A stretch of DNA of 64,000 nucleotides from Macrostomum hystrix (GCA_950097015.1 CATNEN010000007.1:12400001-12464000); one strand, 5' to 3'; positions 21,566 through 62,845 are shown, counted from the first letter of the stretch. The notes: a model not told the origin generated them from the sequence alone. Numbers and translations are program-made.

Positions 21566-23314
<1,749 letters not shown>

Positions 23315-43144: not shown

Positions 43145-43861
43145 TCAGTCCAGCCGCTGCAGCAGCTGGTCCAGTCGGGCAATGTGCAACTCCTCGGGGA
43201 CGTCGGCGCTCTCCCGGCCGGTCGGGTCCAGCAGCAGGGCTCGGAAGCCGCAGGCCCTGGCGGCGTCGAAGTCGGTGCGCCGGTCGTCGCCGACGTGGAG
43301 GATGGCGCCGGGCTCGACGCCGAGTCGCTGGGCGGCCAGCGCGAAGATGCGCGGGTCCGGCTTGACGAGGTCGGCCTCGAAGCTGGTGACGACGGTGGCG
43401 AACTTGTCAGCCACGCCCAGGCGGGCCAGGATGTCCGGCAGGCGTTCGTCAAAGTTGGAAAGGACGCCCAGCTTCAGGGAGCGGGCGGCCAGCGCTGCCA
43501 GGGTGTCCGCGCAGCCGTCAGTCAGCTCCACGGCACCAGGAGTCTTGTAGAAGTTCCTGAGGTTCTTGCACAGGATATCCGGCACGTCCTTCGGCTTCAG
43601 GGCGCCTTCAGAGGCGGCCACGAACAGGCGGCGGATGAACTCGCTCCACCAGGCCTCGGCGGTGGCGGCCCCGGAGGCGCGGCCGAAGTTGGGCTGCTCG
43701 GCCAGCATGGCGGACATTGTGGCAGGCACCGCAGCGTCCAGCCGCTCCTGGCTGACACTGTCGATGCCGTAGCTCTTCGCGTACTTCAGGTACTGGTAGC
43801 CGACGCTCTTGCGGGCGCGGACCAGCGTGCCCCAGGCATCGAATGTGACGGCCGCGAGCCT
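43145..43861 (-). CDS. HDHD3: HAD-superfamily hydrolase, HDHD3/Reg-2-like (start Met absent from this exon)
   Basis: Motif I VTFDAWGTL, SVGYQY, PNFG, motif II LGVLSNFDERL, KPDPRIF, motif IV HVGDD..DFDAARACG; acceptor ccttgcag at 43863-43862. Confidence 0.88.
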   Translation of the reverse strand, partial: RLAAVTFDAWGTLVRARKSVGYQYLKYAKSYGIDSVSQERLDAAVPATMSAMLAEQPNFGRASGAATAEAWWSEFIRRLFVAASEGALKPKDVPDILCKNLRNFYKTPGAVELTDGCADTLAALAARSLKLGVLSNFDERLPDILARLGVADKFATVVTSFEADLVKPDPRIFALAAQRLGVEPGAILHVGDDRRTDFDAARACGFRALLLDPTGRESADVPEELHIARLDQLLQRLD

Positions 43862-44371
43862 CTGCAAGGCACGGAAAATCGCCCCTATTACACTGGGGAA
43901 TGTGGACAAAGTGGCAAGCCAAAGGACTTCAGAATCCTGAATCGTTCGTGATAGAATATAAACAAATGAAAGTCGCAGGAAAATGAAGCGCGGTTCAGCG
44001 CGAGTTGAACACTGGAGACTATTTTATTGAATCATATTGCCAATTGAAGTTACTGAGAACTAGCCGGGACCATGGAAAGCACAACAGCAGCAATTATATG
44101 CGAACTAGAGATAAAGACTAACTGGCATCTCAGTGACCAGAGGAGGACTCTGGGGACTAGGAGCAGAGCAACTGGGGAGCACCAAAGTGGCATCTAGAAA
44201 ATGTAGAAACAAAATTCATTAAAATTATGAAATGCAACGCTAACAAGAATACATAGGATATTGTTCTCAGTACAGATCAACAACTGCTTCACCACCGGTA
44301 TGAGGCAACTATTATAATAATTTTACATGTAACAATAAGAAAACTATTCACTAATTGTTTTAGTAACTCAC

Positions 44372-45680
44372 AATCTCACACTCTTACAAACCGGATCTCA
44401 CACTCTCACAAACCGGATCTCACACTCTCACAAACCGGATCTCACACTCTCACAAACCAGATCTCACACTCTCACACACCGAATCTCACACTCTCACACA
44501 CCGAATCTCACACTCTCACACACCGAATCTCACACTCTCACACACCGAATCTCACACTCCAACACCGGATCTCACACTCTCACACACCGAATCTCACACT
44601 CCAACACCGGATCTCACACTCTCACACACCGAATCTCACACTCCAACACCGGATCTCACACTCTCACAAACCGAATCTCACACTCTCACACACCGAATCT
44701 CACACTCTCACACACCGAATCTCACACTCTCACACACCGAATCTCACACTCTCACACACCAGATCTCACACTCTCACACACCAGATCTCACACTCTCACA
44801 CACCGAATCTCACACTCTCACACACCGAATCTCACACTCTCACACACCGAATCTCACACTCTCACAAACCGAATCTCACACTCTCACACACCGAATCTCA
44901 CACTCTCACAAACCAGATCTCACACTCTTACACACCGAATCTCACACTCTCACACACCGAATCTCACACTCTCACACACCGAATCTCACACTCTCACACA
45001 CCAGATCTCACACTCTCACACACCAGATCTCACACTCTCACACACCAGATCTCACACTCTCACACACCAGATCTCACACTCACACACCGGTTCTCACACT
45101 CTCACACACCAGATCTCACACTCTCACACACCAGATCTCACACTCTCACACACCAGATCTCACACTCTCACACACCAGATCTCACACTCTCACACACCAG
45201 ATCTCACACTCTCACACACCAGATCTCACACTCTCACACACCAGATCTCACACTCTCACACACCAGATCTCACACTCTCACACACCAGATCTCACACTCT
45301 CACACACCAGATCTCACACTCTCACACACCAGATCTCACACTCTCACACACCGAATCTCACACTCTCACACACCAGATCTCACACTCTCACACACCAGAT
45401 CTCACACTCACACACCGGATCTCACACTCTCACACACCAGATCTCACACTCTCACACACCAGATCTCACACTCTCACACACCAGATCTCACACTCTCACA
45501 CACCAGATCTCACACTCTCACACACCAGATCTCACACTCTCACACACCAGATCTCACATTCTCACACACCAGATCTCACACTCTCACACCGGTTCCCACA
45601 CTCACACACCGGTTCCCACACTCACACACCGGTTCCCACACTCACACACCGGTTCCCACACTCACACACCGGTTCCCACA
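44372..45680. repeat. 22-bp minisatellite grading into a 20-bp unit that overlaps the zinc-finger stop codon
   Basis: Units CTCACACTCTCACACACCAGAT and CTCACACACCGGTTCCCACA. Confidence 0.95.
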
Positions 45681-46864
45681 CTGCCAGACGGTCCATTCCG
45701 TTGGTGAATCCTCGCGTGCCGGTATAGGCGGTCCTTCCTCTTGAAGCGCGAGTCGCACAGCCCGCACTGGAAGGGCCTGTCGGTGCTGTGAACCAGCAGG
45801 TGTCGTTTCAACAGGCTCGGTGCGCGGAAGGTCTTGCCGCAGTGCTCACATCCTTGCTCGCTCCTCAAGCTTTTGCGACGCTTCTTAGCTGCGCAGTTGA
45901 GATCCGAACCGACGTGCAGCTCGTGGCTGAACACGTGCTCAAAGAATTGCAGCGGGTGCGCCTGGCCGAGCTTCTCACCGCAGACGGGGCAGTCGGGACA
46001 GCTGCTCCAGCGCCGCCGTGGCTGCTCTCTGACCGAAGCCGGGTGTCGGGCCACCCGGTGCCTGTACAGGCTGAACTTGGATGAGTAGGAGCGGGGGCAG
46101 AGGCTGCAGGTGAAGGCCTGCTCACCATTGTGCGCCTTCATGTGCAGGCGAAGGCTCCGGTAGGTGGGGAACACCCGGCAGCACACCAGGCACTGGCTGG
46201 GGCTGCTGGACTCCGTGCCGAGTGGTGGGCCGTGGCAGCGCCCGGATTTGCAGTGTCCAAGTAGCAGGCGGCGCTCAGCGAAGCCTCTGCCGCAGCTGTC
46301 GCACTTGAAGGGCTTCTCTGCTCTGTGGACCAAGGCGTGCCTCTTCAGGTGCGTCGACTGGCTGAAGCCTTCGCCGCAATGGTCGCACCTGAATGGCCGC
46401 TCGCCGGTGTGAATTCTGACGTGGATGTCCAAGGTGGAGGACTGGCGGAAGCGCCTGCCGCATTGCTCGCAGGCGAAGGGCAGCTCGCCAGTGTGCACCA
46501 GCCAATGCCGCTTCAGGCTGGTCGAGTAGGCGAAGCGCTTGTCGCACTGCCCGCAGGCGAAGAGCTTCTCGCAAGACTTTGCTGCCAATCCGAGACCGAC
46601 TTCCTGAGCAGTCTGGCGCATCAGGGCGTCAGCAATGCCCTCAGCTCCCTGTGGTTCAACGAGCTGCTCATTGAGTTCCTCTTTCTGCTCCGCCTTAAGC
46701 TTCTGAGCAGCGCTCTGAGGATGAAGCTCAGCCAGCGGGGAGCTTTCCTTGGTGACGGGTGGAGCCATGGAAGGCCGCAGCACGCCTTTGATGTCGGAAA
46801 CGGCTCTGGGAACGACATTTCCGGAGCTCATCTGCCAGTCGCAGCAACTGCCAGGCTCTGCCAT
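45662..46864 (-). CDS. C2H2 zinc-finger protein (about 9 fingers), 400 aa
   Basis: CxxC...HxxxH fingers with HTGELPF, HTGERPF and HSTDRPF linkers. Confidence 0.92.
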   Translation of the reverse strand: MAEPGSCCDWQMSSGNVVPRAVSDIKGVLRPSMAPPVTKESSPLAELHPQSAAQKLKAEQKEELNEQLVEPQGAEGIADALMRQTAQEVGLGLAAKSCEKLFACGQCDKRFAYSTSLKRHWLVHTGELPFACEQCGRRFRQSSTLDIHVRIHTGERPFRCDHCGEGFSQSTHLKRHALVHRAEKPFKCDSCGRGFAERRLLLGHCKSGRCHGPPLGTESSSPSQCLVCCRVFPTYRSLRLHMKAHNGEQAFTCSLCPRSYSSKFSLYRHRVARHPASVREQPRRRWSSCPDCPVCGEKLGQAHPLQFFEHVFSHELHVGSDLNCAAKKRRKSLRSEQGCEHCGKTFRAPSLLKRHLLVHSTDRPFQCGLCDSRFKRKDRLYRHARIHQRNGPSGSVGTGV

Positions 46865-46921
46865 CTCCGCGTGCCGTCAGCACTGGAACAGTCATAAGCA
46901 GTCAACTAGTCACAATATATT

Positions 46922-47535
46922 ATAGATTTGGTCATCTGACTGGTCACGGGATAGATTTGCTAATCTGACTGGTCATGGGATAGATTTGCTAATCTGACTG
47001 GTCACGGGATAGATTTGCTAATCTGACTGGTCACGGAATAGATTTGCTAATCTGACTGGTCACGGGATAGATTTGCTAATCTGACTGGTCATGGGATAGA
47101 TTTGCTAATCTGACTGGTCACGGGATAGATTTGCTAATCTGACTGGTCACGGAATAGATTTGCTAATCTGACTGGTCACGGGATAGATTTGCTAATCTGA
47201 CTGGTCATGGGATAGATTTGCTAATCTGACTGGTCACGGGATAGATTTGCTAATCTGACTGGTCACGGAATAGATTTGCTAATCTGACTGGTCACGGGAT
47301 AGATTTGCTAATCTGACTGGTCATGGGATAGATTTGGTCATCTTACTGGTCATGGGATAGATTTGGTCATCTTACTGGCCATGGGATAGATTTGGTCATC
47401 TGACTGGTCATGGGATAGATTTGGTCATCTGACTGGTCATGGGATAGATTTGGTCATCTGACTGGTCATGGGATAGATGTGGTCATCTGACTGACTGGTT
47501 ACGTGATAGATTCGGTCATCTGACTGGTCACGGGA
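46922..47535. repeat. 29-bp minisatellite
   Basis: Unit GGGATAGATTTGCTAATCTGACTGGTCAC. Confidence 0.95.
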
Positions 47536-47887
47536 TATGATTTTTATGGATATATAAAACGAGCGACACTAAACGTCCGTTAGAAAGAAATTTCAGGAGA
47601 GTAACACGGATGTAAAAAAGTGGTCGGAAGTTTAATGTGCATTGCACATTGTACTTTTACGAGCGTAAGTTGCATGTTTAGTTTATGTAAAATCAGTTAG
47701 TATAAGGGAATGATGAAATGATAGGAGAAGCACAGCCTACAACATGATAGCAGCAGTGCCAGCATCTGCGTTATCTCGATTGGAATTCAGAACAAAAGTA
47801 CATTGTAAGCGTTACCGACGGCCAAAAATACTTGCTCAGTGATAGGCTATCAGCAGCAATCAGTTTTTCAGATAATCTGTGTGGCCG

Positions 47888-48895
47888 TCAGGACAGGAAG
47901 AACAGGTCCTCCAGCACACCCGAGTCGTCATCGCCGTCAGAGTTCTCGCCCTCCCCCGCATCGACGAAACCGCGAAATTCTTCTTCATCCTCGTACAACT
48001 GTGGCCCGTCGAGCGACTCCACAATGTCAAGCAGCGACTCCGGCCGGGGTGACGTCGAAGAGGGCGGCGGCTGTTGATGAGTGGCGGGCGGGCCGAGAAC
48101 CTCCGGCAGGACGTAGAATTCGTCCTCGGCTGAGTCGGCATTCGGTCCTCGCAGGATCCGGTTTCGTGTGCTGCCTGCGTTGTCCTTGCCGCGGCGGTTG
48201 CCACGCTCGTGAACGCCGCTGAGCTGCCGCAACTGACGGCAAAGATGCCGCTGGGTCCTGTCATTGAGCTGAAGCTGCTGTCGCAGCAAGGCCACGATCG
48301 CGTCATCGTCATCCGCCTGCGGCTTGGAGCTGGCAGAGTTGGGGGCGACGGAAGCGCCGATCTCGCGGTCGATTTGCTCCGTAAAGGCGCGGCGTCGGCT
48401 TTTTGTCGATGGCGCCGGCGGCAGAGGCGGCAGCGGCTGCGGCGGCGGCAGCGAATCACACTGGCTGGCAACGCTTTGAGGACCTCGACGCTCCCTGTCA
48501 GCGTCGGCTGAAAGGCGCGCCTCTAGCTCGGCGAGGGTGCGCCGCTGCCGCTCCAGGTCGGCGCGCAGTTCGTCAGCCTCACGACGGCGCAGCTGCCGCT
48601 CTTCGGCGAGGAGCCGCTCTGCGCGCGCCTTCGCTTCGTCCAGGCGACCGAGCTCCGACACCAGCTCAGCCAGGCGCTGCCGCTCCGCCGGGCCCAGATC
48701 AGCGAAGGTCCTCAGCTGCTGCTGCTGCGGTGGCGCTGGCGGCGGGTACTGCTGAGGCAGCGCAGCCTCGATCAGCTGCTGCTTTTTCTGAGGTCGCGGC
48801 CGCTTTTTAGCCGTGAGAGCGGGCGAGTCGGGCTCGCGCAGGCCGGACACCCAGGCCGCCTTGGGCCGAGTGTCCAGCCGCTGCTGCTGGTCCAT
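47888..48895 (-). CDS. KIAA1328: Hinderin (KIAA1328)-like coiled-coil protein
   Basis: FADLGPAERQRLAELVSELGRLDEAK matches the hinderin conserved coil as recalled; C-terminal VLEDLFFL motif; ATG at 48895 downstream of acceptor tttttttacag (48930). Confidence 0.75.
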   Translation of the reverse strand: MDQQQRLDTRPKAAWVSGLREPDSPALTAKKRPRPQKKQQLIEAALPQQYPPPAPPQQQQLRTFADLGPAERQRLAELVSELGRLDEAKARAERLLAEERQLRRREADELRADLERQRRTLAELEARLSADADRERRGPQSVASQCDSLPPPQPLPPLPPAPSTKSRRRAFTEQIDREIGASVAPNSASSKPQADDDDAIVALLRQQLQLNDRTQRHLCRQLRQLSGVHERGNRRGKDNAGSTRNRILRGPNADSAEDEFYVLPEVLGPPATHQQPPPSSTSPRPESLLDIVESLDGPQLYEDEEEFRGFVDAGEGENSDGDDDSGVLEDLFFLS

Positions 48896-49094
48896 TCGCT
48901 CACCGCTCGGCGGTTTCCTCGGCTGTTCGCTGTAAAAAAACGAGGCCAGAAGGCCTGTTACAGAACACATAAGCATTCTTCTCTTTTCATTCTGACCGAA
49001 ATAGCGAAAGAATAAACGAGGATGGCTAGGAAAAACGAGGACGGAGCGGAGAATCTAGGACGTAGGGGAAAAATGAGGAAGAAGATGAGAAACT

Positions 49095-49270
49095 AGAAGG
49101 GGAGAAACGAGGAAGGATTGGAGAAACATGGAGGGGAGAAACAAGGAGGGGAGAAACAAGGAGGGGAGAAACAAGGAGGGGAGAAAAAAGGAGGGGAGAA
49201 ACGAGGAGGGGAGAAACAAGGAGGGGAGAAACAAGGAGGGGAGAAACGAGGAGGGATGGGAGAAACAAAG
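49095..49270. repeat. 15-bp purine-rich repeat
   Basis: Unit GAGGGGAGAAACAAG. Confidence 0.9.
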
Positions 49271-49748
49271 GGGAACAATGAAGAATGCTAGAACTTTTCT
49301 TCCCTACGGGAGAGCCGGAGCAGGAGAAAAGCCGGAGAAACGAGGACGGAGGTGAGAAAAGAGAGAGGAGGGGAGAATCGAAGACTGAAGAAAAACAAGG
49401 ATGGATGAGAAAAACGAAACGGTGGGGAGATACAAAAGAGTTCTGATTTCCGCAGCACTCAATAGTTAAAGAAGAGAATCAAGCAGCAGCTGAACTTGTG
49501 CAGAAGCAGACAGGCTACCGAGAGCATGAGTTTTATTTATATTTCATCTGAGCCATCGGACTCTAGTTTTTAGGCTGAAGCGGGCAGAACGTAGAGTTTA
49601 GGTTGTCTAGATTTCGCACTGAGAGGATATTATTAATTTGTTAGGAACTAAGCGATGTGGTTCTATGTTACAGAGTTCATTATTCTAACCCCAAACTACA
49701 GTGCAAGCTACATGGGCAGGTGAGTTAGTTAATAAGGGCGCAGCAGGC

Positions 49749-50015
49749 CTATTTCTCCGGCACTGCCTCCAGCGAGATGGTCTTGTAGATGGCCTTGTTG
49801 CCGGAAAGTTTGCCGCCGAAGAAGCCGCGGTGGCCGGCCTGCTCCACAATGCGCTGGTCGCGCGCGTACATGGGGAAATCGTAGGCGTCGTTGAGCACGG
49901 AGCGCTGGTACCAGCGCCGGTCGCGCAGCAGGTAGTTGGCCGCGAAGTGGACGCCGTGAAAGGCATTCATGCACACGAACACGATGGCCGCGGAGGGCAG
50001 GATTTCGTACCACAT
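49749..50015 (-). CDS. NDUFA1: NADH dehydrogenase (complex I) subunit NDUFA1 (MWFE), 88 aa
   Basis: Begins MWYEILP, one TM helix, conserved M..RD.RI and Y...LE; ATG at 50015. Confidence 0.92.
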   Translation of the reverse strand: MWYEILPSAAIVFVCMNAFHGVHFAANYLLRDRRWYQRSVLNDAYDFPMYARDQRIVEQAGHRGFFGGKLSGNKAIYKTISLEAVPEK

Positions 50016-51201
50016 TGCGCTTTCTAGTGCTACTACTTTTGTGAGTAGTTCGGTGCGGGCGGATGGGTCTGGAAGAGTCGAAGGCAAGATTGAAATTTGC
50101 TAGTTTACAAAACTTTCTAACCGATTAAAAATGTCGCTGCCCCACGCCTAACTGATATATTTGGCCTATATACTTCTTCTGGCCTACAGTAGCTTCAATG
50201 CGCACAAACTCAAATGCCAGGTGGGCCCGAGCTGTTAAAGCATGACCTAAATTGATTGTCTGGCACTGCTGAAATCGATACACCTGCTTTATACGGCCTC
50301 CTAAACCTAACAAAACTGCAATTCAGTTGAAAAAAATAACTCAAGTAGCGGAGAGTTTCACGCGCGGTCGAGGGCCGCCAGGATACACGCGACAACTCGA
50401 GCTCAGCATCGCGTGAGCACTGCTCAAGAAATCGTGCATATTTATTAGCTGCACGAGTTGCGGGCTCATGGCAGAAGCAGAAGCGCAGTGGAGGGGATTC
50501 TGAAGAGGAGAGGGAAAGTACAGCTCGGCTGCTACAGCAACGCTGGCTGGGGCGGTGGGCAGTAATGACTGGGACGGCAACGTTGATGAGGGATCCCGGC
50601 CCGGCCAGGTAGGGAACACCTGCTACTAGGGGCAGAAACTGCAAAGGCTAACAATGGTCTTCATAAATTAGTTATGACTGACAAGTTCCCGCGGGAGAGG
50701 CGAGGTGGGCGGGCCAGCCAGCCGGCGAAATCGTGGGAGGCGGTGAGGGGTCAAGCGGCGGGCCGGCAGTGCCTGAATAGCTGGATGCAGGAAGCGCATT
50801 CAGCAGCCTCCTCCCCCCCCCAGCCAAAGTACTGAGTTCCAGCATAGCAGCCAGGAGCAGTCGGGGCTGTTTTTGACAGCTCTGGCAGCAGCGGCAGAGC
50901 TTTAGAGCAGCCATGGGTCTCAGAGCACTTGAACAGGCGCTAATGGCATAGAGGCAAGCAGCAATGGCAAAGCAGGGCTTAAGCAATGTAATTGACACAT
51001 TAAAATGCAAAAATATGCACTGCGACTAGGCCATCGCTTGTAAGTACAATAAGTACTCTGTCTAGGATTAGAAGTGCATGCAATTTGCTCATTTGGCTTG
51101 GGCTAGTTATGTCAGAAGTGAAATTATTGAAGAAAGATCGGTTAAAGTCACTATCAAAACACGAAGGATCAGGCAACAATGGCTCCTGTGGCTGGCTGGG
51201 C

Positions 51202-51972
51202 TCAGCCCAGGCGCTTGCGCTGCAGAATAATGGCGATGCCCAGCAGCACAGTGAGGTTGTCCACCAGCAGGCGTGCGTGGCACCAGAAGTCCATGCCGAC
51301 CCGGTGCAGCCAGTAGTTCGGCCGCATGTCGTTGACGAGCGTGACGCCCAGCAGGATGCAGGCGAGCAGCTTGATGGCCGCGTAGAAGTTGAAGTTGGAC
51401 AGCAGCGCCAGGCCGGCCAGGCAGTACATGCAGGCAACGGCCCAGTGCAAGTGCGGCAAGGACTCGCCCACGTTGCGGCGAAGGGCCTCGGCCTCTTCCG
51501 GCACAGTGGCAAAAGCGTAGGCGGAACCGATGGCGTAGATGCCGAGTAGGGAGCGGGCGGCCTGGCGCAGCTGGCTGGAGGTGGAGGCCAGGGTGTCGCA
51601 GATGGCGGCGAAGTGCAGGAAGACGGCACAGCAGCCCAGGCTGGGCAGGGCCAGGCGGGCGCGCACCCAAGGCTTGTAGCGAAGGGCTGGCGCAGTGATG
51701 GTAAGGTAGGCCATGTACAGCAGCAGGCCGCAGTAGATCAGCAGCGCCTGCCGTCTGCGAATGTTCAGAGAGACGGCGAAGCCCAGGGCCACGCAGCTGA
51801 ACACCAGCACGTAGATGAGGCGAGGAGCCAGCGGTGGCTCAGACTCCCGTTTGGCTCGCTCGCTCAGCAGCATCAGTAGCGTCAGCGCGTTGGCAAATGG
51901 CACGCGGGTGAATAGCACCACCAGGAACTTAAAGGACATGCTGCCCGCCCCCTCCTGCTGTTGCTGTGCCAT
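51202..51972 (-). CDS. TMEM101: Transmembrane protein 101, 256 aa
   Basis: LFTRVPF..LMLLSERA, LGIYAI..AY and YW....DFW match TMEM101 as recalled; same length and multi-TM profile. Confidence 0.88.
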   Translation of the reverse strand: MAQQQQEGAGSMSFKFLVVLFTRVPFANALTLLMLLSERAKRESEPPLAPRLIYVLVFSCVALGFAVSLNIRRRQALLIYCGLLLYMAYLTITAPALRYKPWVRARLALPSLGCCAVFLHFAAICDTLASTSSQLRQAARSLLGIYAIGSAYAFATVPEEAEALRRNVGESLPHLHWAVACMYCLAGLALLSNFNFYAAIKLLACILLGVTLVNDMRPNYWLHRVGMDFWCHARLLVDNLTVLLGIAIILQRKRLG

Positions 51973-54582
51973 GTGTCTTGCTGCAAGATAGGGTGCTTCC
52001 CAATTGTTATTATTTTTATTAACGAAATCATTTTAAACACAAATGCGCTTATCCGTGCATCAACTGGGCAGCTAGATATGTTAATAGATGGCAATAGAAC
52101 TTTAAGGCTAACGTTACTCTGTAAATCTAGTGCACTCATTGAGTTACAAAGACAGAAAGCAGACAAAGGCTCTACAAGCGTGCAGACAAGGGGAAGCCCG
52201 GCGTATAAAAACAAATAGTAAATTATGAATCCCGAGCTTTATATTACTTGTACGAAAATTGGATACCTGGAAATCAATATCGTCAATGGAAACAGGTCTA
52301 GATTGCAGATCAAGAGACGCTAATAAGCTGATGCCCCAAATACGCTTGCGTGATCAGAACCTCCCTTCATTCCGTCTGTGCCCGTCTATCAGCAGCGCAT
52401 GCCTGACTGAGGCCTGGACCCGCCCGGCACATCGGTCCGATCTGGCAGCCACGCCCGCCAAGCGGAAATGATGGCTGGAAAAATTACAATGGCTACAGTG
52501 GACAGCACAGGTTTCATTTAATCTGCCCTTCTTCTTACAAGCAACCAAGCGCACAGTTAATAGAGCAACAAGTAAAGGACGCACAGATTTGCACAGCAAT
52601 TATGCGGCCTATGCGCGGGGTGCAGCCGCTGTCATTCGAGAAGCGGCGGTGAGCAGCACGGCGAAGCATCGGGTGGAGTATCAAATGTCTGGTGCCATCC
52701 ATCCGCACAGCCACTAGGAACTAGGATCTAAATGCTGGGTGCAGGCCTTAGTTATGAGCGCCCGATGTCTGACCTATATTTGTTTCGAAGGCGATGCAAG
52801 ATGGTGCACGCTGGGAGACTGGAAATTGGAGGCGCAGTCAGCTCCTGGCTACTGAGAGTCCTGAGCGGAGGGTCAGACAGAAAACATTTCTATTCTAATC
52901 AATTTGCCCCTTAAGATCCATCTTCCCATTGTTCCCATGCACTGCAGCTCAATACGGACATCGCTAACGAGCTAAACAGGAAGCCGCAAGTGCGCCATCT
53001 CAAAAGTAATCAGGTTGAGCAGCTTTTGGCAGCTGCACAAACCAGGCCTCCAGAGGGCCACGGAAAGAACTGGCAAATAAAGCTGGCGAATTACTCAGCA
53101 ATTCATTGGAAACTGAATCCGGTGTCGGGCGCTTGGGCCGCTATTATTGACACAATGCGCGGTCTATTTTTGCAAAAAATGATTGGCATTTAGCATCTAA
53201 TGACGAGCGGAGATGCGGCAGCGCAACAGGAGCTAACACAGATCCAGACTTAGCATGAGAAGGCAGGCGAGGCAGACGCGGGATGCCAATAGACGGGGGA
53301 GTACAGAGCGTTTGCTTGTTTGGAAGGATGACATTAAAATACCCGGAGAGGATGACGGTGGGATAGGAAAGAATGTTAATTACAAAAATCCCGAAATGAA
53401 ACAAGCAATGCCATTTTTGGACCACACAGGCAGCGCGTCAGCGCAGCCACGCAACGCTCATTAGGCAATATGAATCAAGGGAAGCGGTTGAGAGCGCAGT
53501 GAGGCCACAAAAGCGAAGCAGCTCAGGTTGAGCTTGAGGCCAAGCACTGAGCGGCAAGAGAAAACAACGATTTTATTGCGCAAAAAGCAATGAGCTCAAG
53601 CTGCATTTGACGTAGGAATATCCTGGGAATCTCGCTGACGGACTACGAGTACAAAAGTGCTATAATGCTTTAGGTAACCTAGGGAAGTGATTCTACTTAG
53701 AAGCCGCAACAACATAAGTCTGCAGACAAACTGCAAACCTGTCTTGGTGAAAAAGCCCGCAGTCCATTTTTCAGTTGCTTCATCCTCGGCTGCACACTAA
53801 CGTACCCGCTGTCGATTCCGAGGGTTTGGGAGCCCAGCTGCCAACTCCCAGCGGGCGGGCCTCTCACAGCCATTCCTATTCGATGGAAGGTAAAGAACGG
53901 AGAGGAGACAAGTCGGGACGGGCTTTCGATTGACAGGCATCGACCCGCTGTCGCCAAAGCGAAGTGAAATCTCGAGTGAGACAGACAGGGAGGTGTCGGC
54001 AACGAAGAGCTAGGACTAGGAAGAGGGGCGCCTGCCCACCTCTAGGATCAGTGTCGTCTTCCCGGCGCGCTTGTTATTGACCCAAGTGCGCGGGCGGAAT
54101 GGGAGCGCCAGTGCTGTCGCGAATCAATGCTGGGGAAATAACAGGCCAGCAGCACACCCCCTGCCGGGTTCGTCTGTCTGCGGCTCATATGCGTAGGGAA
54201 GGATGCATCAAAACAACTGCAGAAATTAGGCGCCAAAGAAAATGCCAGCCATATGGATTGTGGCGGGAGCAGAGAGTTGGGGGTGCAACTTCCAACTCTC
54301 AGGCGCACCTTCCTGGTGGGAGTGTGTAATTGTCACCAGGCACACATAAGACTTCAGGGGCGCACGTATTCCCTTTTACTCGCAAATTGCATAACCTCGC
54401 GTCCACATCTTTCCACAAACTCGAAGCGATTCAGGCGAACAAGATAAAGGAAAATGCGAAAAAGCCTCGCGCAGAAAATTACCCAGCGCAGGAAATGTAA
54501 ACGAACAGTAGTAGTGCACAGTTATTACGGAGCACGCACGGGGGAAAGCATGTCCATAAGCATCCTCAGCGAAAGAAGCACG

Positions 54583-56535
54583 CTACAACTGCGTTTCAGT
54601 CTCTGATAGCTGCGGTTGACCTCCAGCAACAGCTACGCCGCCGCTGCTGCTGCTGCCGTTGCGAAGACGGTTGCCAGATCGCCTTCGGTGGCCGCTCTGG
54701 TGCACAATGGCCGATGAAGTACAAACAGCGCTTGACGTGGATGCGGCAGAGTCCGATGCCGAAGCGAGCTGTTGGCGTGCGGCCAATAGGTAGTCGCGAA
54801 TAAGATGAGCCGCCTGGTTAGCCTGCCGGCAGTGGAGGGACAGACGGCCTTGGCCCCGCAGCTGAAGGGAGAGTTGCGCGCGGCTGTCCGAGCCGAAGCC
54901 GAGCAGGTCAGGGTAGACAAAGACGACTAGCGGTACTGTACGCCGCCAGTCAGCGTCGATAACATCGCCGTCATCATTGCAAGAGCTAGGAGTCTCGGGC
55001 AGAATCTGCAGACCAGCTTCACCGACAGCGAGTGCGCATGCATCCCCGATTGACGCAGTAGCTGCTGCCAGCGGGCTGTGAAGTCGAGCAGAGAAAACGG
55101 TGCAGCCGAACAGCGGAGATGCAGAACGGCAGGCGGCCAGAAGCTGCAGATCGAGAGCCCGATGGCGATCTCGACCTTCCTTTGGGGCGATGGCGGCCGC
55201 CTCGGCAGACGCAGTGCTGGCAGCAGTCAGGATGGCATCAAGGGGTACGCGGTCTCGCCAACGTCGGGGCAGGATTCGGCGCACTAGGGCGGGATCTGTG
55301 CCGGCGGTGGTGGCTTCGCGTGCTGATTGAATGCCGCAAAGAGCCTTCGCCAGTTCCAGCGTGAGCGGCAGGTGGCCCTCGAAGACATTAGTGAGGCATT
55401 GGTGGGCCATAAGAGACACCTCTATGTCGTCCGATTCATCCACATAGGGAGAAATAAAAAGGCGCTTCTTAAGCAGCAGTCGGACCAGATGCGGGCTACC
55501 ATTCAGCTGACCATGTTGCTCCCAACGGAACAAGGCGTCCCCGATAAACTCGGCAGGCCCTGTGCAGCGCTCGGGCGCGCCAGGGAACTGCTCAAACAGA
55601 GCCCAACCAGCTGCGCTGGGCTTCAATGGAACTTGGCTGATCACAGCAGCGGTAGCCTCAGCGCCAGTGAGGTGCGAGTGAAACTCCAGCTGGCGGCTCT
55701 CCCCATTCAGCAAGTTGACAAGCACCCGCGCGTTGGCGCATGCAAAGGCCGCCGAGAGCTCTGCGGCCGAAGGTGGGAATCGGCGTCTGGAGGGTCGGGC
55801 TGGTCGGGCAAGGCAAGCAAGACAAAACTGGGCGCAGCGCGCTGGCTCGCATGGTGGTTGTTGGCGGGATAAACGGGTGAGATGACAGCGCAGGAGACGC
55901 ATTGCGGGCTCCCAGGTGGGACGGATAAGAGAGCAGGCAGCGCAGAGCAACTGATGTGGTCTCGGTGCTGTTGCCGGAAGGCCGTCTGGCGAGTCGCAAT
56001 AGGTCTGGCGCACGAGCTGCAGGAAGAGCTCGCTTGTTAGTCGGTCGGATTCCAGGCATCGCTGCAGCACTGCTTGCACCGTCCGAACAACCGCAGGCTC
56101 GTCGAGACTGGTGGCTCGCTCGACAAGATGTATCGCAGCTGAAAATTTCACCGCAGCTGAGCGTGCAGAGTCGGTGGTGTGTATAAGCAGCGGCTGTTTT
56201 AACGGGGCAGCAGCCCGAATCCAGTAGGCGGCCTTGAAGCAGGCTGGGTCTGCGCAGCCAGCAGACGCTGGGGTCGGTGGCTTCGGCGCATCTGATGGCG
56301 ACTCGCCTCCATTGGGGCTTCCACAAGCTTTTGGTGCGTCGGCATTGCCGCCCCCACGCTGTCGGCGCTTGGCTCGGCTGAGGACCCGCAGGAACGCAGA
56401 TGCCGCGTCCTCCTGAGGCGGCCTGGCAAGGAGGCCAGAGACGATGATGGCTCTTCGGCAGTTTGCGAGTTCATCAGACAACGAAGCTACGGAGGAGCCA
56501 GCATCATCGGCAATCGCTGTCGTACCTTCTGCCAT
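54583..56535 (-). CDS. MyTH4-FERM domain protein (PLEKHH/myosin-tail-like), 650 aa, intronless CDS
   Basis: MyTH4 (LTSELFLQLVRQT; RRFPPSAAEL) followed by FERM (GWALFE; IGDALFRWE; LLLKKRLF; PLFGCTVF). Confidence 0.85.
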   Translation of the reverse strand: MAEGTTAIADDAGSSVASLSDELANCRRAIIVSGLLARPPQEDAASAFLRVLSRAKRRQRGGGNADAPKACGSPNGGESPSDAPKPPTPASAGCADPACFKAAYWIRAAAPLKQPLLIHTTDSARSAAVKFSAAIHLVERATSLDEPAVVRTVQAVLQRCLESDRLTSELFLQLVRQTYCDSPDGLPATAPRPHQLLCAACSLIRPTWEPAMRLLRCHLTRLSRQQPPCEPARCAQFCLACLARPARPSRRRFPPSAAELSAAFACANARVLVNLLNGESRQLEFHSHLTGAEATAAVISQVPLKPSAAGWALFEQFPGAPERCTGPAEFIGDALFRWEQHGQLNGSPHLVRLLLKKRLFISPYVDESDDIEVSLMAHQCLTNVFEGHLPLTLELAKALCGIQSAREATTAGTDPALVRRILPRRWRDRVPLDAILTAASTASAEAAAIAPKEGRDRHRALDLQLLAACRSASPLFGCTVFSARLHSPLAAATASIGDACALAVGEAGLQILPETPSSCNDDGDVIDADWRRTVPLVVFVYPDLLGFGSDSRAQLSLQLRGQGRLSLHCRQANQAAHLIRDYLLAARQQLASASDSAASTSSAVCTSSAIVHQSGHRRRSGNRLRNGSSSSGGVAVAGGQPQLSETETQL

Positions 56536-58232
56536 TTAGGGAGTTAAGCTAAAGGATTAAACCACATGGACGGGCTCCGGCAAACAGAGAAGAGGCAGCC
56601 TCTTTTTAAAAAGCCGAGGCTATTGAGCACTTTTGTTCTCCTCAGTCCATCTGTTCATAAGTAAAAAAATCCTTTTCAATATCAAAGTAATTTTGCGAGT
56701 TTTGCTTCTTTGGCGCTACCAAAAGCTTTGCCAAATGTGGAGCGGCACGAGAGTGGGGGCGAGCAAGCAACAGGAGCAACTGAGTTGGAGCAGACGCTGA
56801 GTGACTGAGCGAGGCTGAGGGATCGCCTTCTGCTCTGTCGTTGCGGCACAGCTATCCTAGACACGGCAGGCTTTGCGCCCGCCCCACAGTATGTAAATAC
56901 ACACAGTCCCGCTTGCCCCACCCCAGCCACCAGCCGCCCTTGCCCGGGCAGGGCCAATGCCAAGCCGTGCGGCAGGCAGAGCCGCATGGCCGGGCATCCT
57001 GCAGACAAGCACTGCAGCCAGAGGATATAAATTCGCGGACTACAAGGGGCAGGAAACCCGGTCGGAGTGAACACGAAGCAGCGCCTACTTAAAAAACAAT
57101 GCCGGTATGGAGCAGCGGAGCTACACAGAAATCCCATTGCATGGTCCCGAGACCGACTGATTCACCTGCTGCGTGCGCTAACATAACATGCGACTAGAAG
57201 TCGGTGCACAACACACACAGGGCAAGATCCGCGGACAGTCAAATAACTCGCAATAAAATTAAGTAGCCACCACAGTCTGGCACAGCGGCATAGTTTGAAT
57301 GTCAACAGAAAAGCGCGAATCCAATTACAGGCCTCTCCAAATTAGCGGCTTCGGCATGCGGAAGACACACACCCAACGCCAGCAAAGCAGACTTGCTAAT
57401 TGATAACTGGGTTCATAGTTACACACTGATAGTGTTAATCTGGATGAATTAGGGTCATTGGAATGTGTGAGCATCCCCAGTGAAGGTATGCACAGCAATC
57501 CATAGGAGTGCTTCGTGTGAGAGTCCACAACAGGCAGGCAGGAGTACATTACAATAGAGCGGAGCCCAGATAGACAATGCACAGCGCACAGCCTGGCAGC
57601 AACAGGGAGCCGTCAAGCAGTATGGGAGCGGGGCTAGGACAGGCGCAGAGAGCTCATGAATAATTAAGAACTCAGAGTGCCAATGGGAAGGCGACAATGT
57701 CATGGTCCGGTCCCAGCCCGCAGCTTATGGTGGCACAATGAAGTCAGGGCGATGTCTCGCACATTTAGTGCAATTACACAAGACCCAGTCTGAATAATTC
57801 AGTGCCACAGCGGGCCATGGAAGCTGCGCGTTGGACTCGGACAGGTTAGTAGGGGCGAATGCCCACCGGTGTTGATTACGCATGGCGGGCAACACGATAG
57901 CGCTGTGTCAACACCATATAAAAATTGCAGCTATCCTGGTCGGCAATTAGACAGGCAAAAGATTGATAAAAAGCAAGAGAAGACAGTAGCAAGCATGCAG
58001 GAGACTGGATCTTTAAAGAGACTGAAACCAGCTGCATGGAATTCGGTATTTAAATCCATGACAGCTACTAGAACGAGGGAAGTACCAAATGGAACACGTG
58101 AAGAGCACAATGCAGTATCCTTCATAAATCTTAAAATCTGCAGAAATGACTGCACCGATGCTAACCTGTGAGTCATCTGACAGACTGATGAGGATTAAAT
58201 CTAAAAAATAACTACTTTCTAAATATACTACT

Positions 58233-58417
58233 TGTAGTGTGCGTACGCACGTGAGCCAGGCCCAGGTGTACACCTGGGTCGTTTGATTGGTTGCGGAGCG
58301 GGGTGGGTGTCGCCACCCCAGTTCTAGCAAATAATATATGGACGCGCGCTCAGCGTGGCAGTAAAGATTGAGAGTTTTGTCTGCTCACTAAAAATAGCCT
58401 CGGCCTTAGTTATTATA
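58233..58417 (+). repeat. 5' LTR
   Basis: TGTAGTG...TTATTATA, identical to the 3' LTR except the penultimate base. Confidence 0.95.
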
Positions 58418-58418
58418 A

Positions 58419-58431
58419 TGGCATCGCAAGC
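58419..58431 (+). other. Primer-binding site (TGGCATCGCAAGC)
   Basis: TGG-initiated tract 1 nt after the 5' LTR; primer tRNA not identified. Confidence 0.7.
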
Positions 58432-58450
58432 ACCGAACCCCTAGTGCACC

Positions 58451-61400
58451 ATGACTGAGCAAATTTCTCTCGCGCCTCCCGGCCAGTTTGTTATCGATAG
58501 CGATTGCCACTCAACTGCACAGCGCTGGACTGCATGGGCTCGCCGGTTCGCCACATACATTAACGCAGCTGGGATCCATGACGCAAAGCGAGGGCAGCAC
58601 CTGCTGTTGTACGCCGCGGGAGAGGAGCTGCAGACCATCGTCGAAGAGAATGAAATTGACGCTGGGGAAGACTACAGCAGCCTCGCAAAGAATATCAAGG
58701 AATTCTGGGACGGCAAGAACAGCATCGTGTTCCTCCGCTTCAAGTTCGAGACCTGCAGACAACAGCAAGGCGAGACAATCGACCAGTGGTACCAGCGCCT
58801 GCGCAAGGCGGCGGAGCCGTGCGAGTTTGGAGCGATCAAGGATTCGCTGATCCGAGACAAAATCGTCGCCTACTGTGACTCCGAGAGGCTGAGGAGAGAC
58901 TTCCTACAGAGCAAAGACATCACCCTGACAGATGTGCTGAGGAAGGCGAGAGCCAAAGAAGCGGCGGAGCAGCAGGCCAGCGCGATGGAGAGCGGCAGGC
59001 CAGGTGAGCCGCAGCAGCAACTCGCAGCCATCCGGAGAGCCGAGCAGCCACCAGGGCCGCAGGTGCGCTGCAATCGGTGCGGCAGGCCAGGGCACTCCAC
59101 GTGCGCCGCGGCGCAAGGCAAGAGCTGCAGAAAGTGCGGAAAGCCAGGCCACTTCGCCCGAGCTTGCAGGTCCAGGCAGGAGGCGCCCCAAAGCAATTCG
59201 AATGCTGTCGCGATGCTGCAAGTTGAGACCAGCTACGAGAAGGTGGACGACCCGGACACTGGCATATTCAAGGTCGACCAGGAGCAGCAATCCGCCCACA
59301 CAGTAGCTGAGATCAACGGCACCAGACTGTCAGTGCTGATCGACAGCGGGGCGGCTCGCAATGTGATCAACCGCGCAACGTTTGAGAGCCTTAAACAGCG
59401 GCCGCGTCTGCAAGCAGCCTCTGACAGGTTGTTCGCGTACGGCTCGGACCGGCCGATGCAACTCATCGGCAAGGCGGCGATGTCCATCCGCTTATTCGGC
59501 CGACGGGCGGTCGCCACATTTCACGTTGTCGACGGCAGAGGCATCACCATCATCGGCAGGCAGACGGCCACTCAAATGGAAATCCTGCGGATCGGACCAC
59601 CACCGACGGTCGATCATCAGGTGCTGCAGGTCGCGGAAGCGGAGGCGGCTGTCGACAGCCTCCTCGGCAACACGAGATCCAGTGGAATGCCGCAAGATGC
59701 CCTTGAGAGCATCGGCAGGATACTGCGCAAGTACTCCAGCGTGCTCAGCGGCATCGGCTGCTTCACCGGGCCGCCAGTCAGCATCCACCTGACCGACAAC
59801 GCCCGACCGGTTTGTCACGCACCGTCTAAGGTACCGATTCACCTGGCCGAGGCAGTGGACAAGGAGCTGCAGCTACTGGAGCAGCTCGGAATCATCGAGC
59901 CCGTCGACGGACCAGTTCCGTGGGTCGCGCGGATGGTCGTTGTGCCCAAGAAGGAGCCAGGCGAAGTGCGGATCACACAGGACCTCCGCGATGTCAATCG
60001 CTATGTCATCCGCGAGCGTCACCAGATTCCGACTTTTGAAGAGGTGACGGGAGACATGGCCGGCAGCACCGTCTTCTCGGAACTGGACATCGCGAAGGCG
60101 TTCTACCAGGTGCCTGTAGCAGAAGAATGCCGCAATCTGCTGACATTCTCGACACCCCGAGGACTTCGGCGTCTCACTCGGCTGTGCATGGGCCTGTCCA
60201 CCTCACAGGAGATCCTACAGAGCGTGATGTGCAGAGTGCTGGCAGGCCTGCCCAACGTAAAATGGATCCACGACGACGTGGTCGTGTTCGGCCGCACGAT
60301 GGCGGAGCACAACAGCAGCCTCGAGACCTGCCTGGCCCGCCTGGCGCAACACGGCATCACGCTAAATGCTCGAAAATGCAGGTTGGCACGCAGCAGCATT
60401 GAGTTTATGGGAATGCGACTGACGGCCGAAGGAGTCCAAGCCACAGAAAGCAAGGTCGCCGCCGTTCAAGAATTCAAGGAGCCAGAGACGATAAGCCAAC
60501 TTCGATCGTTCTTGGGCCTCGTGAATTATCTCGCAGTATTCACGCCACAGCTGGCCAAGGTGGCGGAGCCGCTGCGACGCCTGACCCGGAAGAACACCGA
60601 CTGGCAGTGGGGCGCCGACCAGGCCAGCGCCTTTGCGCAGCTAAAGCGCAGCATTGCGGAGCCGACAACGCTGGCATTCTACGACAAGCGGCTACGGACA
60701 CAGCTGATTGTGGACGCGGGACCAACCGGACTCGGCGCAATCCTGGCGCAAGTACAGCACGACGGCAGTTCGCGGCCAGTCGCATACGCGAGCCGGACCC
60801 TCTCCGACGTAGAGCGGCGATATTCGCAGACCGAAAAAGAGGCGCTCGCCGTGAAGTTCGGCTGCCTGAAGTTTGAGTACTACTTGTATGGATCGCCCGA
60901 ATTCACGGTGATCTCCGACCACAAGCCGCTGACAGCCATGTATGCGCCAGGGTCACGGCCGCCTCCACGAGTCGAGCGTATGGCGCTGCGTATCCAGCAC
61001 CTGGTATTCAAGGTCGAATACCAGCCAGGAGCGTCCAATGCTGCAGACATACTCAGCAGGCAGCCTCTAAGCGCTGAAGGACGTAGGACCAGCGAGCAGC
61101 TGAGAGAGGCCTATATAAACGAGGTAGCGCAGGCGGCTGTCCCGAAGGCGCTCACGCTCGAAGACATCCGCAAGAGCTCAGCCAGCGACCCAGTTATCCG
61201 GGCAGCGATAGCAGCGATGCAAGGCGGCCAATGGGACCGCTCTAGCGCTGAGATGCGGTCACTCCACGCGCTGCGAGAGGAGCTGTCGGCGGTAGACGGA
61301 GTTCTTCTTCGGCATCAGCGGATTGTCGTGCCAGCAGCTCTACGACAGCAGATGCTCGAGCTGGCGCACCAAGGACACCAGTGCTCGCAGAAGACGACCG

Positions 61401-62443: not shown

Positions 62444-62647
62444 ACCAAGGACTGAAAACGAACTGACTTTTCTACTGACATTAACAATCACAAGCACGCT
62501 TTTCTTTGCAAGTCCGATGCGACAATCAATTCAAGTGTTTTATTTCCTCCAATAGCTGCATATTTTTTTCGGTCGAGTTCTTTTTCGTTCTTTTCGACAT
62601 CTTGCTTCTCGAATTCGTTCTTTTTTGTCTCCCCACAGTTTCTGTTC

Positions 62648-62660
62648 GAAGGGGGAGAGA
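62648..62660 (+). other. Polypurine tract
   Basis: GAAGGGGGAGAGA immediately 5' of the 3' LTR. Confidence 0.9.
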
Positions 62661-62845
62661 TGTAGTGTGCGTACGCACGTGAGCCAGGCCCAGGTGTACA
62701 CCTGGGTCGTTTGATTGGTTGCGGAGCGGGGTGGGTGTCGCCACCCCAGTTCTAGCAAATAATATATGGACGCGCGCTCAGCGTGGCAGTAAAGATTGAG
62801 AGTTTTGTCTGCTCACTAAAAATAGCCTCGGCCTTAGTTATTACA
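62661..62845 (+). repeat. 3' LTR
   Basis: TG...CA termini, followed by TSD CTACT. Confidence 0.95.

What the first reader, a model, noticed from the sequence alone, without database searches (positions are those of the whole stretch)
43145..56550. Candidate six-gene spliced-leader trans-spliced operon (MyTH4-FERM > TMEM101 > NDUFA1 > hinderin > zinc finger > HDHD3)
Seen: six unrelated genes lie head-to-tail on the minus strand with intronless CDSs, 0.85-2.6 kb apart, and three of the gaps are partly filled by minisatellite. Each has a pyrimidine-rich AG acceptor just 5' of its start: ttaatcctttag (56549, 13 nt before ATG), atcttgcag (51981, 8 nt), gactcttccag (50069, 53 nt), tttttttacag (48930, 34 nt), ctgttccag (about 46883, 18 nt) and ccttgcag (43862, directly at the CDS). 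AATAAA/ATTAAA signals lie in the gaps (about 52015, 49532, 47631, 44023). Known: flatworms resolve polycistronic pre-mRNAs by SL trans-splicing coupled to polyadenylation, and operons tend to hold conserved housekeeping and mitochondrial genes. Inference: one promoter upstream of 56.6 kb drives a polycistronic transcript.
Basis: partly seen in the sequence, partly recalled or inferred. Interest (0 to 1): 0.82.

Follow-up and report, generated by a model that had tools for sequence, protein, structure and literature searches.

The report
Flatworm spliced-leader operon candidate, six genes
Six ordinary single-exon genes lie head to tail in the flatworm Macrostomum hystrix, and the last five look trans-spliced (the last has no start codon and must take it from the leader), which fits an operon type already published for this genus; a shared transcript is not shown.

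Summary
Six minus-strand, single-ORF genes sit at the stated coordinates: MyTH4-FERM, TMEM101, NDUFA1/MWFE, an unassigned coiled-coil protein ("hinderin" not supported), a C2H2 zinc finger and an HDHD3-like HAD hydrolase.

The genome is the published M. hystrix assembly. Its spliced-leader (SL) gene ends ...TTGCATG|GTAAG.

The five downstream genes each have the published Macrostomum trans-splice acceptor YTNCAG 0-53 nt before the coding start. The decoy rate is 16%, so five of five gives p about 1e-4. The first gene has only CTTTAG.

The HAD gene has no ATG of its own. Its acceptor abuts the reading frame in phase. The M. lignano orthologue (PAA93799.1, "partial") begins at exactly that codon, so the SL very probably supplies the start codon.

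Distances from poly(A) hexamer to next acceptor, repeats subtracted, are 34 (or 536/1591), 372, 230, 126 and 161 nt. Gaps 2-5 fall below the published 1-kb operon criterion; gap 1 does only if MyTH4 uses one of the two distal hexamers.

No RNA data could be reached, so one promoter and one polycistronic transcript remain inferred.

This is a new member of a known kind. The scan has reported similar clusters elsewhere in this genome.

The parts
54583..56535 (-). Gene 1: MyTH4-FERM-type protein, 650 aa, single ORF; an in-frame TAA lies directly before the ATG
   Evidence: Pfam MyTH4 1e-13 and RA_2 9e-13. PDB myosin-X MyTH4-FERM cassette 9e-11. GC3 is 0.60, lower than the other five genes.
56549..56560 (-). 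Candidate acceptor ttaatcctttAG, 13 nt before the gene 1 ATG; does not fit YTNCAG
   Evidence: Sequence read. No YTNCAG within 200 nt upstream.
51202..51972 (-). Gene 2: TMEM101, 256 aa, single ORF
   Evidence: Pfam TMEM101 4e-26, covering profile positions 11-250 of 252. Single copy in the genome.
51981..51986 (-). Consensus SL acceptor CTTGCAG; the exon starts at 51980 and the 5' UTR is 8 nt
   Evidence: AATAAA at 52020-52015 ends 34 nt upstream of the exon start.
49749..50015 (-). Gene 3: NDUFA1 / MWFE subunit of complex I, 88 aa
   Evidence: Pfam MWFE 7e-08, 33 bits against a cut-off of 27.
50069..50074 (-). Consensus SL acceptor TTCCAG; the exon starts at 50068 and the 5' UTR is 53 nt
   Evidence: There is no GTRAG donor anywhere in the 1133-nt gap upstream.
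47888..48895 (-). Gene 4: coiled-coil protein, 335 aa counted from the first ATG after the acceptor; no family assigned ('hinderin' not supported)
   Evidence: No Pfam hit even at E <= 10 apart from noise. GC3 0.76. Single copy.
48930..48935 (-). Consensus SL acceptor TTACAG; the exon starts at 48929 and the 5' UTR is 34 nt
   Evidence: No GTRAG donor in the gap upstream.
45662..46864 (-). Gene 5: C2H2 zinc-finger protein, 400 aa; its last codons and stop codon lie in the first units of the 22-mer satellite
   Evidence: Pfam zf-C2H2 and zf-H2C2_2, about 5e-30 to 5e-31. TRF array begins at 45682. Sequence read.
46883..46888 (-). Consensus SL acceptor TTCCAG; the exon starts at 46882 and the 5' UTR is 18 nt
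43145..43861 (-). Gene 6: HDHD3-like HAD hydrolase, 238 codons, no start codon of its own; the first codon AGG follows the acceptor directly
   Evidence: Pfam Hydrolase 1e-21. M. lignano PAA93799.1 'partial' is 238 aa, 88% identical, and starts at the same residue, RLAAVTFDAWGTL. No upstream ATG reads through into the acceptor.
43862..43867 (-). Consensus SL acceptor TTGCAG, in phase with the HAD reading frame; an SL-terminal AUG would become codon 1
   Evidence: AATAAA at 44028-44023 ends 161 nt upstream of the exon start.
44373..45682 (.). 22-mer GT-rich minisatellite, about 60 units, filling most of gap 5; on the sense strand it carries more than 100 GTGAG donor-like motifs
   Evidence: TRF. 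More than 60 related arrays elsewhere in the genome. Donor list.
46922..47543 (.). 29-mer minisatellite, 21 units, in gap 4
   Evidence: TRF.
49014..49385 (.). Pyrimidine-rich (sense strand) 15/30-mer minisatellite in gap 3, ending about 85 nt before the gene 4 acceptor
   Evidence: TRF. Sequence read.
49532..49537 (-). AATAAA 211 nt after the NDUFA1 stop
47631..47636 (-). ATTAAA 251 nt after the gene 4 stop
50441..50446 (-). AATAAA 755 nt after the TMEM101 stop; it ends 372 nt before the NDUFA1 exon start
56551..58232 (-). Only space available for a promoter of gene 1 (1.7 kb), bounded upstream by an LTR retrotransposon on the opposite strand
   Evidence: No gene-like ORF in the 8 kb beyond the element.

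Best explanation
This is an ordinary Macrostomum-type cluster of spliced-leader trans-spliced genes in M. hystrix, and at least part of it is probably a polycistronic operon.

**Proposed mechanism.**
- RNA polymerase II starts upstream of gene 1, or for a five-gene version inside gap 1.
- It reads through several genes, including the minisatellites in the spacers.
- Each upstream message is cleaved and polyadenylated at an AATAAA/ATTAAA signal.
- Each downstream message gets its capped 5' end when the single Macrostomum SL is trans-spliced to a YTNCAG acceptor 0-53 nt before the coding sequence.
- For the last gene (HAD hydrolase) the SL's terminal AUG is also the initiator codon.

**Shown here.**
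- The genes, their order and their strand.
- The SL gene and its terminal ATG.
- The consensus acceptors and their enrichment over decoys.
- The lack of a start codon in the HAD gene.
- The identical N-terminal boundary in the M. lignano orthologue.
- The short repeat-adjusted spacers.

**Inferred.**
- Actual SL addition at genes 2-5.
- Co-transcription across the gaps.
- The position of the promoter.

**My odds.**
- HAD gene is SL trans-spliced and uses the SL AUG: about 0.85.
- At least one adjacent pair is co-transcribed: about 0.7.
- Five or six genes come from one promoter: about 0.3-0.35.
For: **SL gene.** There are twenty exact SL 3' ends followed by GT, sixteen of them in 11.6-kb arrays. 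The full exon reads ...CGGTCTCTTACTGCGAAGACTCAATTTATTGCATG|GTAAG. This is identical to the 35-nt M. lignano SL (PMC8629364).

**Acceptors.** YTNCAG is the published top motif at M. lignano trans-splice sites. It sits 0-53 nt before the start of all five downstream genes, against 16% of decoy ORFs, so p is about 1e-4.

**HAD gene.**
- No ATG in the 510 nt upstream reads into the acceptor.
- The acceptor is in phase with the reading frame.
- M. lignano PAA93799.1, from a transcript-based annotation cut at SL sites (PMC5730564), is flagged partial and starts at the same residue.
- SL-donated start codons are documented in flatworms (Cheng et al. 2006, as cited in PMC9851317).

**Spacers.**
- Poly(A) hexamer to next exon start, with tandem repeats subtracted, is 34/536/1591, 372, 230, 126 and 161 nt.
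- The published operon criterion is below 1 kb after repeat subtraction, with a mode near 100 nt. The same paper states that repeats inflate operon spacers.
- Gaps 2 and 3 contain no GTRAG donor that could feed the acceptors in cis.
- The gaps hold no further genes or known RNAs.
Against: - No RNA evidence of any kind was obtained for M. hystrix.
- Trans-splicing does not imply an operon. About 60% of trans-spliced M. lignano genes are not classed as operonic.
- Raw gaps of 0.8-2.6 kb are long enough to hold a 3' UTR plus a promoter plus an outron.
- The poly(A) sites are only hexamer predictions.
- Gap 1 is 2.6 kb without repeats, and the first gene lacks a consensus acceptor.
- Operons of more than three genes are a small minority in M. 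lignano: 75% have two genes, 18% have three, and the maximum is nine.
- At TMEM101 and the MyTH4 gene, an SL AUG would open an out-of-frame upstream ORF that overlaps the real start (32 and 14 codons). This is tolerated in flatworms but is not ideal.
- The 22-mer satellite places more than 100 donor-like GTGAG motifs upstream of the HAD acceptor on the sense strand.
Confidence: 0.6

Rival explanations
1. Six independent transcription units. Each gap holds the upstream gene's 3' UTR, then a promoter and a short outron for the next gene. Genes 2-6 are SL trans-spliced one by one (monocistronic trans-splicing), and the shared orientation is chance or local history.
For: - About 60% of trans-spliced M. 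lignano genes are not operonic.
- Raw gaps are 0.8-2.6 kb.
- Six co-oriented genes have only p = 1/32 by chance, and the scan has looked at thousands of windows.
- Gap 1 in particular has room for a promoter.
- Large operons are rare.
Against: - After repeat subtraction, only 126-372 nt remain between the predicted poly(A) signals and the acceptors in gaps 2-5. That leaves little room for a promoter plus outron, and it lies in the operon mode of the published bimodal distribution.
- All five gaps carry the same sense-strand T>A and C>G skew. This is weak evidence.
Confidence: 0.3
2. The AG sites are ordinary cis-splice acceptors. Each gene has a non-coding 5' exon (for the HAD gene, one carrying an ATG) further upstream in its gap, and no SL is added.
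For: - The cis-acceptor consensus in M. lignano is also CAG.
- In parasitic flatworms many acceptors are used both in cis and in trans (PMC12582326).
- Gaps 1, 4 and 5 contain GTRAG motifs.
Against: - Gaps 2 and 3 have no GTRAG donor.
- No ATG upstream of the HAD acceptor stays open up to a donor or to the acceptor.
- The M. lignano transcript-based model is 5'-partial and starts exactly at the acceptor codon. A cis exon carrying an ATG would have given a complete ORF.
- The fuller YTNCAG motif is the one reported as specific to trans-splice sites.
Confidence: 0.07
3. The six genes are processed retrocopies that happen to lie together. That would explain why none has an intron, and the apparent acceptors would be chance.
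For: All six are single-exon, whereas M. hystrix genes average five introns.
Against: - The genome holds no parent copies or any other copies.
- There are no poly(A) tails and no SL remnants at their ends.
- The M. lignano orthologue of the HAD gene has the same boundary.
- The acceptor enrichment has p about 1e-4.
Confidence: 0.03

Closest known systems
SL trans-spliced operons of Macrostomum lignano (Wudarski et al. 2017, PMC5730564; Ustyantsev & Berezikov 2021, PMC8629364)
   Same: - Same genus and an identical 35-nt SL ending in ATG.
- The same YTNCAG acceptor motif.
- Conserved, housekeeping-type genes.
- Spacers inflated by simple repeats but below 1 kb once repeats are removed.
- Operon sizes up to nine genes are reported.
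   Different: - The species is M. hystrix, whose genome paper maps SL sites but contains no operon analysis.
- Five or six genes would be at the large end of the published size range.
- All members here are intron-less.
- No RNA evidence was obtained here.
Flatworm SL 3'-terminal AUG used as initiator methionine (Cheng et al. 2006, J Biol Chem, cited in PMC9851317 and PMC12582326)
   Same: The SL ends in AUG. The recipient gene (HAD hydrolase) has no start codon of its own, and its acceptor is in phase with the reading frame.
   Different: That case was described experimentally in Schistosoma mansoni. Here it is inferred from sequence and from the orthologue's annotated 5' end.
Caenorhabditis elegans operons (Blumenthal & Gleason 2003; Allen et al. 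2011; my own knowledge)
   Same: - Co-oriented genes.
- Polyadenylation of the upstream message coupled to trans-splicing of the downstream one.
- A spacer mode near 100 nt and sizes of two to eight genes.
   Different: - Nematodes use a dedicated SL2 for downstream genes, whereas Macrostomum has a single SL type.
- The raw spacers here are 0.8-2.6 kb and partly minisatellite.
Operon candidates of parasitic flatworms (PMC12582326)
   Same: SL trans-splicing resolves the polycistrons, and cis-splicing is rare at downstream acceptors.
   Different: That study used a spacer threshold of 300 bp or less, and mostly found gene pairs. The raw spacers here would fail that threshold.

Membership tests
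SL trans-spliced metazoan operon (Macrostomum type) | The organism has an SL RNA gene with a donor site after the leader | tested here: met
   20 exact copies of the SL 3' end followed by GT, 16 of them in 11.6-kb arrays. The exon ends ...TTGCATG|GTAAG.
SL trans-spliced metazoan operon (Macrostomum type) | Adjacent genes on one strand with no opposite-strand gene between them | tested here: met
   Six minus-strand ORFs. The gaps have no coding-like ORFs, Pfam hits or Rfam hits.
SL trans-spliced metazoan operon (Macrostomum type) | Downstream genes carry an unpaired 3' splice acceptor just upstream of the coding sequence that receives the SL | tested here: inconclusive
   - At sequence level, YTNCAG lies 0-53 nt upstream in 5 of 5 downstream genes, p about 1e-4.
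- Gaps 2 and 3 have no GTRAG donor.
- Actual SL addition is supported only indirectly, and only for the HAD gene, through the M. lignano orthologue.
- No SL-bearing reads were available.
SL trans-spliced metazoan operon (Macrostomum type) | Short intercistronic distance: below 1 kb after repeat subtraction, with a mode near 100 nt (PMC8629364) | tested here: inconclusive
   From predicted poly(A) hexamers the distances are 372, 230, 126 and 161 nt for gaps 2-5, which meets the criterion. Gap 1 is 34, 536 or 1591 nt depending on the hexamer used. The true 3' ends are unknown.
SL trans-spliced metazoan operon (Macrostomum type) | One promoter and a polycistronic pre-mRNA that spans the gaps | not testable with these tools
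No RNA-seq, CAGE or long-read data were reachable.
SL-donated initiator AUG (flatworm slORF) | The SL ends in AUG, and the recipient ORF lacks its own start and is in phase with the acceptor | tested here: met
   - The SL ends in ATG.
- The exon starts at 43861 on a codon boundary.
- No usable upstream ATG exists.
- The orthologue's product starts at the same residue and is flagged partial.
SL-donated initiator AUG (flatworm slORF) | Translation actually starts at the SL AUG | not testable with these tools
   This needs ribosome profiling or N-terminal proteomics.
Hinderin (KIAA1328) family, for gene 4 | Significant match to the family profile | tested here: not met
   Pfam returned no hinderin match at E <= 10, only noise hits (Casc1_N at 0.041).

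The most novel reading that the evidence does not exclude
All six intron-less genes are made from one roughly 13.5-kb pre-mRNA in which the minisatellites are functional spacer elements, not neutral filler. For example, the 370-nt pyrimidine-rich array ahead of gene 4 could act as an extended polypyrimidine or U-rich element that couples 3'-end formation to SL addition. Operon membership would itself have driven the loss of all introns in the six genes.
Probability: 0.08. Interest if true: 0.45.

Novelty: new member of a known kind. Interest (0 to 1): 0.2.

Why it matters
**As an operon.** It adds one well-delimited five- or six-gene candidate to a class already described genome-wide in the sister species M. 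lignano. Operons have not been catalogued for M. hystrix.

**Practical value.**
- The HAD gene and similar genes will be annotated as 5'-partial or with a wrong start unless the SL's AUG is taken into account.
- The locus is compact, single-copy and intron-free. That makes it a convenient place to test, with RT-PCR or long reads, whether Macrostomum polymerase really reads through kilobase minisatellites between cistrons.

Neither point would surprise a specialist.

Tried and rejected

**Searches that gave nothing useful.**
- The word-based protein search found nothing for the MyTH4 protein or TMEM101. I therefore could not compare M. lignano locus tags or accession numbers across the cluster.
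- The single HMMER job, spent on the zinc-finger protein in the hope of finding its M. lignano orthologue and transcriptional-unit name, was swamped by giant poly-zinc-finger proteins. With hindsight it was a poor choice.
- The exact-sequence look-up found none of the five M. hystrix proteins.
- Supplements of the two M. lignano papers, and a full-text search for the locus tag, held nothing.

**Ideas tested and dropped.**
- I looked for 'fossil' RNA evidence, meaning SL-bearing retrocopies or a duplicated cluster in the same genome. The six genes are single-copy; only the 22-mer satellite is dispersed.
- Strand-skew analysis of the gaps fits sense-strand transcription. It does not separate 3' UTRs from intercistronic RNA, so I give it little weight.
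- The retrocopy idea and hidden genes or RNAs in the gaps were rejected.

Each exon was searched on its own, and reading-frame relations were computed from the exon starts only.

Full report
**What is in the sequence**

Pfam assigns five of them:
- MyTH4 plus an RA-like domain (54583-56535)
- TMEM101 (51202-51972)
- the MWFE/NDUFA1 subunit of complex I (ATG at 50015, stop at 49749)
- C2H2 zinc fingers (45662-46864)
- a HAD hydrolase (43145-43861)

The first protein also matches the solved MyTH4-FERM cassette of myosin-X at E = 9e-11, so that label is fair. The fourth ORF (47888-48895) is an Ala/Arg/Gln-rich coiled-coil protein. It has no Pfam family even at E <= 10, so 'hinderin' is not supported.

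Each protein is covered end to end by one ORF:
- TMEM101 covers profile positions 11-250 of 252.
- MWFE covers 1-53 of 55.
- The HAD protein aligns over 100% of its length to its orthologue.

The genes are therefore intron-less. M. hystrix genes average five introns (PMC10468722).

TRF confirms minisatellites in gaps 3, 4 and 5. The gaps contain no other coding-like ORFs, Pfam matches or Rfam RNAs.

**Which organism**

The window is contig C7:12,400,001-12,464,000 of a 220,453,370-bp, 42-contig assembly. Those figures, and the length of C7 (13,505,968, equal to the reported N50), are exactly those of the published Macrostomum hystrix assembly (PMC10468722).

The genome holds twenty exact copies of the SL 3' end followed by GT, sixteen of them in arrays of 11.6-kb period. 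The gene reads ...CGGTCTCTTACTGCGAAGACTCAATTTATTGCATG|GTAAG. This is identical to the 35-nt M. lignano leader (PMC8629364). The leader ends in ATG.

**Are the acceptors more than chance?**

The published top motif at M. lignano trans-splice sites is [T/C]TNCAG, placed right at the junction. All five downstream genes have it:

| Gene | Motif | Position of G | Distance to coding start |
|---|---|---|---|
| TMEM101 | CTTGCAG | 51981 | 8 nt |
| NDUFA1 | TTCCAG | 50069 | 53 nt |
| Coiled-coil gene | TTACAG | 48930 | 34 nt |
| Zinc finger | TTCCAG | 46883 | 18 nt |
| HAD hydrolase | TTGCAG | 43862 | 0 nt |

The motif occurs at 0.0027 per nt in the non-coding minus strand. It ends within 60 nt upstream of 16% of 81 decoy ATG-ORFs in the window. 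Five of five therefore has a probability near 1e-4.

The first gene has only CTTTAG, with no consensus motif within 200 nt. In M. lignano, 18% of operons start with a gene that is not trans-spliced.

**The start-less HAD gene**

The HAD reading frame has no ATG before residue 55 of the mature model. Every ATG in the 510 nt between the satellite and the acceptor runs into a stop after at most 47 codons. The exon begins at 43861 on a codon boundary, so a leader ending in AUG would give M-RLAAVTFDAWGTL. That places the catalytic Asp of HAD motif I nine residues from the N-terminus, as in HDHD3-like relatives (P0002).

The only close relative found is M. lignano PAA93799.1 (BOX15_Mlig023196g1). 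It is 238 aa long, 88% identical, flagged 'partial', and begins with exactly the same residue. That annotation was made from transcripts cut at experimentally mapped SL sites, with the leader trimmed off (PMC5730564). The shared boundary is therefore good indirect evidence that the orthologous acceptor receives the SL.

Use of the SL's terminal AUG as initiator is documented for flatworms (Cheng et al. 2006, as cited in PMC9851317). An unfollowed first-reader note on this window (s1-840592) made the same point.

**Operon or merely trans-spliced neighbours?**

This is the part that could not be tested directly.

The M. lignano study classes adjacent same-strand trans-spliced genes as operonic when their distance is below 1 kb after subtracting repeats. 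The distribution is bimodal with a main peak near 100 nt. The authors note explicitly that repeats inflate operon spacers.

Here the distance from the last AATAAA/ATTAAA hexamer to the next exon start, minus tandem repeats, is as follows:

| Gap | Distance (nt) |
|---|---|
| 1 | 34, or 536 or 1591 with the other hexamers |
| 2 | 372 |
| 3 | 230 |
| 4 | 126 |
| 5 | 161 |

Gaps 2 and 3 contain no GTRAG donor that could use the acceptors in cis. By the published operational rule, genes 2-6 form an operon candidate. Gene 1 belongs to it only if its 3' UTR runs about 2.1 to 2.6 kb, to one of the two distal hexamers.

Several points weigh against a single transcript:
- About 60% of trans-spliced M. 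lignano genes are not operonic.
- 93% of its operons have only two or three genes.
- The poly(A) sites here are predictions.
- The raw gaps are long enough for promoters.

I put at least one co-transcribed pair at about 0.7. I put a single five- or six-gene transcript at about 0.3-0.35.

**Surroundings**

Upstream of gene 1 lie 1.7 kb of unique sequence. Beyond that is an opposite-strand Ty3/gypsy element with an intact 1330-aa gag-pol ORF and identical 183-nt LTR segments (58233-62843). Beyond the element lie satellites, with no gene, for 8 kb. Downstream of the HAD gene an ATTAAA lies 115 nt after the stop, followed by a 2.1-kb 46-mer satellite. The run therefore really has six members.

All six genes are single-copy in the genome. 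No retrocopy or duplicated cluster exists that could serve as fossil RNA evidence.

**Limits**

- Two of the three word-based protein searches returned nothing.
- The one HMMER job was swamped by poly-zinc-finger proteins.
- I built no joined SL-exon sequence. Exons were searched separately, and frame relations were computed from the exon starts alone.

**Verdict**

The kind of system is already published for this genus, and other agents of this scan reached the same reading for similar clusters elsewhere in this genome. It is a new member of a known kind, of low interest.

Noticed in passing
window 58233-62843 (+): Ty3/gypsy LTR retrotransposon with one uninterrupted 1330-aa gag-pol ORF (zinc knuckle, protease, RT, RNase H, integrase) and two 183-nt LTR segments that are 100% identical. 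It looks like a young insertion, 1.7 kb upstream of the cluster and on the opposite strand.
   Followed up: partly
window 45662-45682 and 44373-45682: The last seven or so codons and the TGA stop of the zinc-finger gene lie inside the first units of the 22-mer GT-rich satellite. The satellite family has more than 60 other arrays across the genome at 66-78% identity. On the sense strand it carries more than 100 GTGAG donor-like motifs.
   Followed up: partly
window 40678-42797: A 46-mer minisatellite of 46 units at 97% identity lies directly downstream of the cluster.
   Followed up: no
G000:C7:8556421, C7:8561409, C8:629358, C24:365104, C38:27887531, C32:2125919 and others: SL 3' ends (...GACTCAATTTATTGCATG) are followed by GC, AA, AG, CA and so on instead of the GT donor. 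They are scattered outside the SL arrays. They could be SL-bearing retrocopies of trans-spliced mRNAs or SL-derived repeats.
   Followed up: no
window 15536-17059 (-): A single 507-aa ORF encodes a voltage-gated K+ channel (BTB_2 tetramerisation domain plus Ion_trans) with GC3 of 0.92. It is another intron-less gene in this window.
   Followed up: no
window 22001-24000: A sharp composition anomaly (GC 0.34, GC skew -0.50) overlaps long plus-strand ORFs at 21507-23315. It is probably a low-complexity repeat.
   Followed up: no
window 54583-56535: The MyTH4-FERM gene has GC3 of 0.60, against 0.76-0.90 for the other five genes. This hints at a different expression level or history from its neighbours.
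   Followed up: no
L022 8337-10000 (G000:C7:12470337-12472000): A further 16/32/80-mer CA-rich satellite of at least 1.6 kb lies upstream of the retrotransposon.
   Followed up: no
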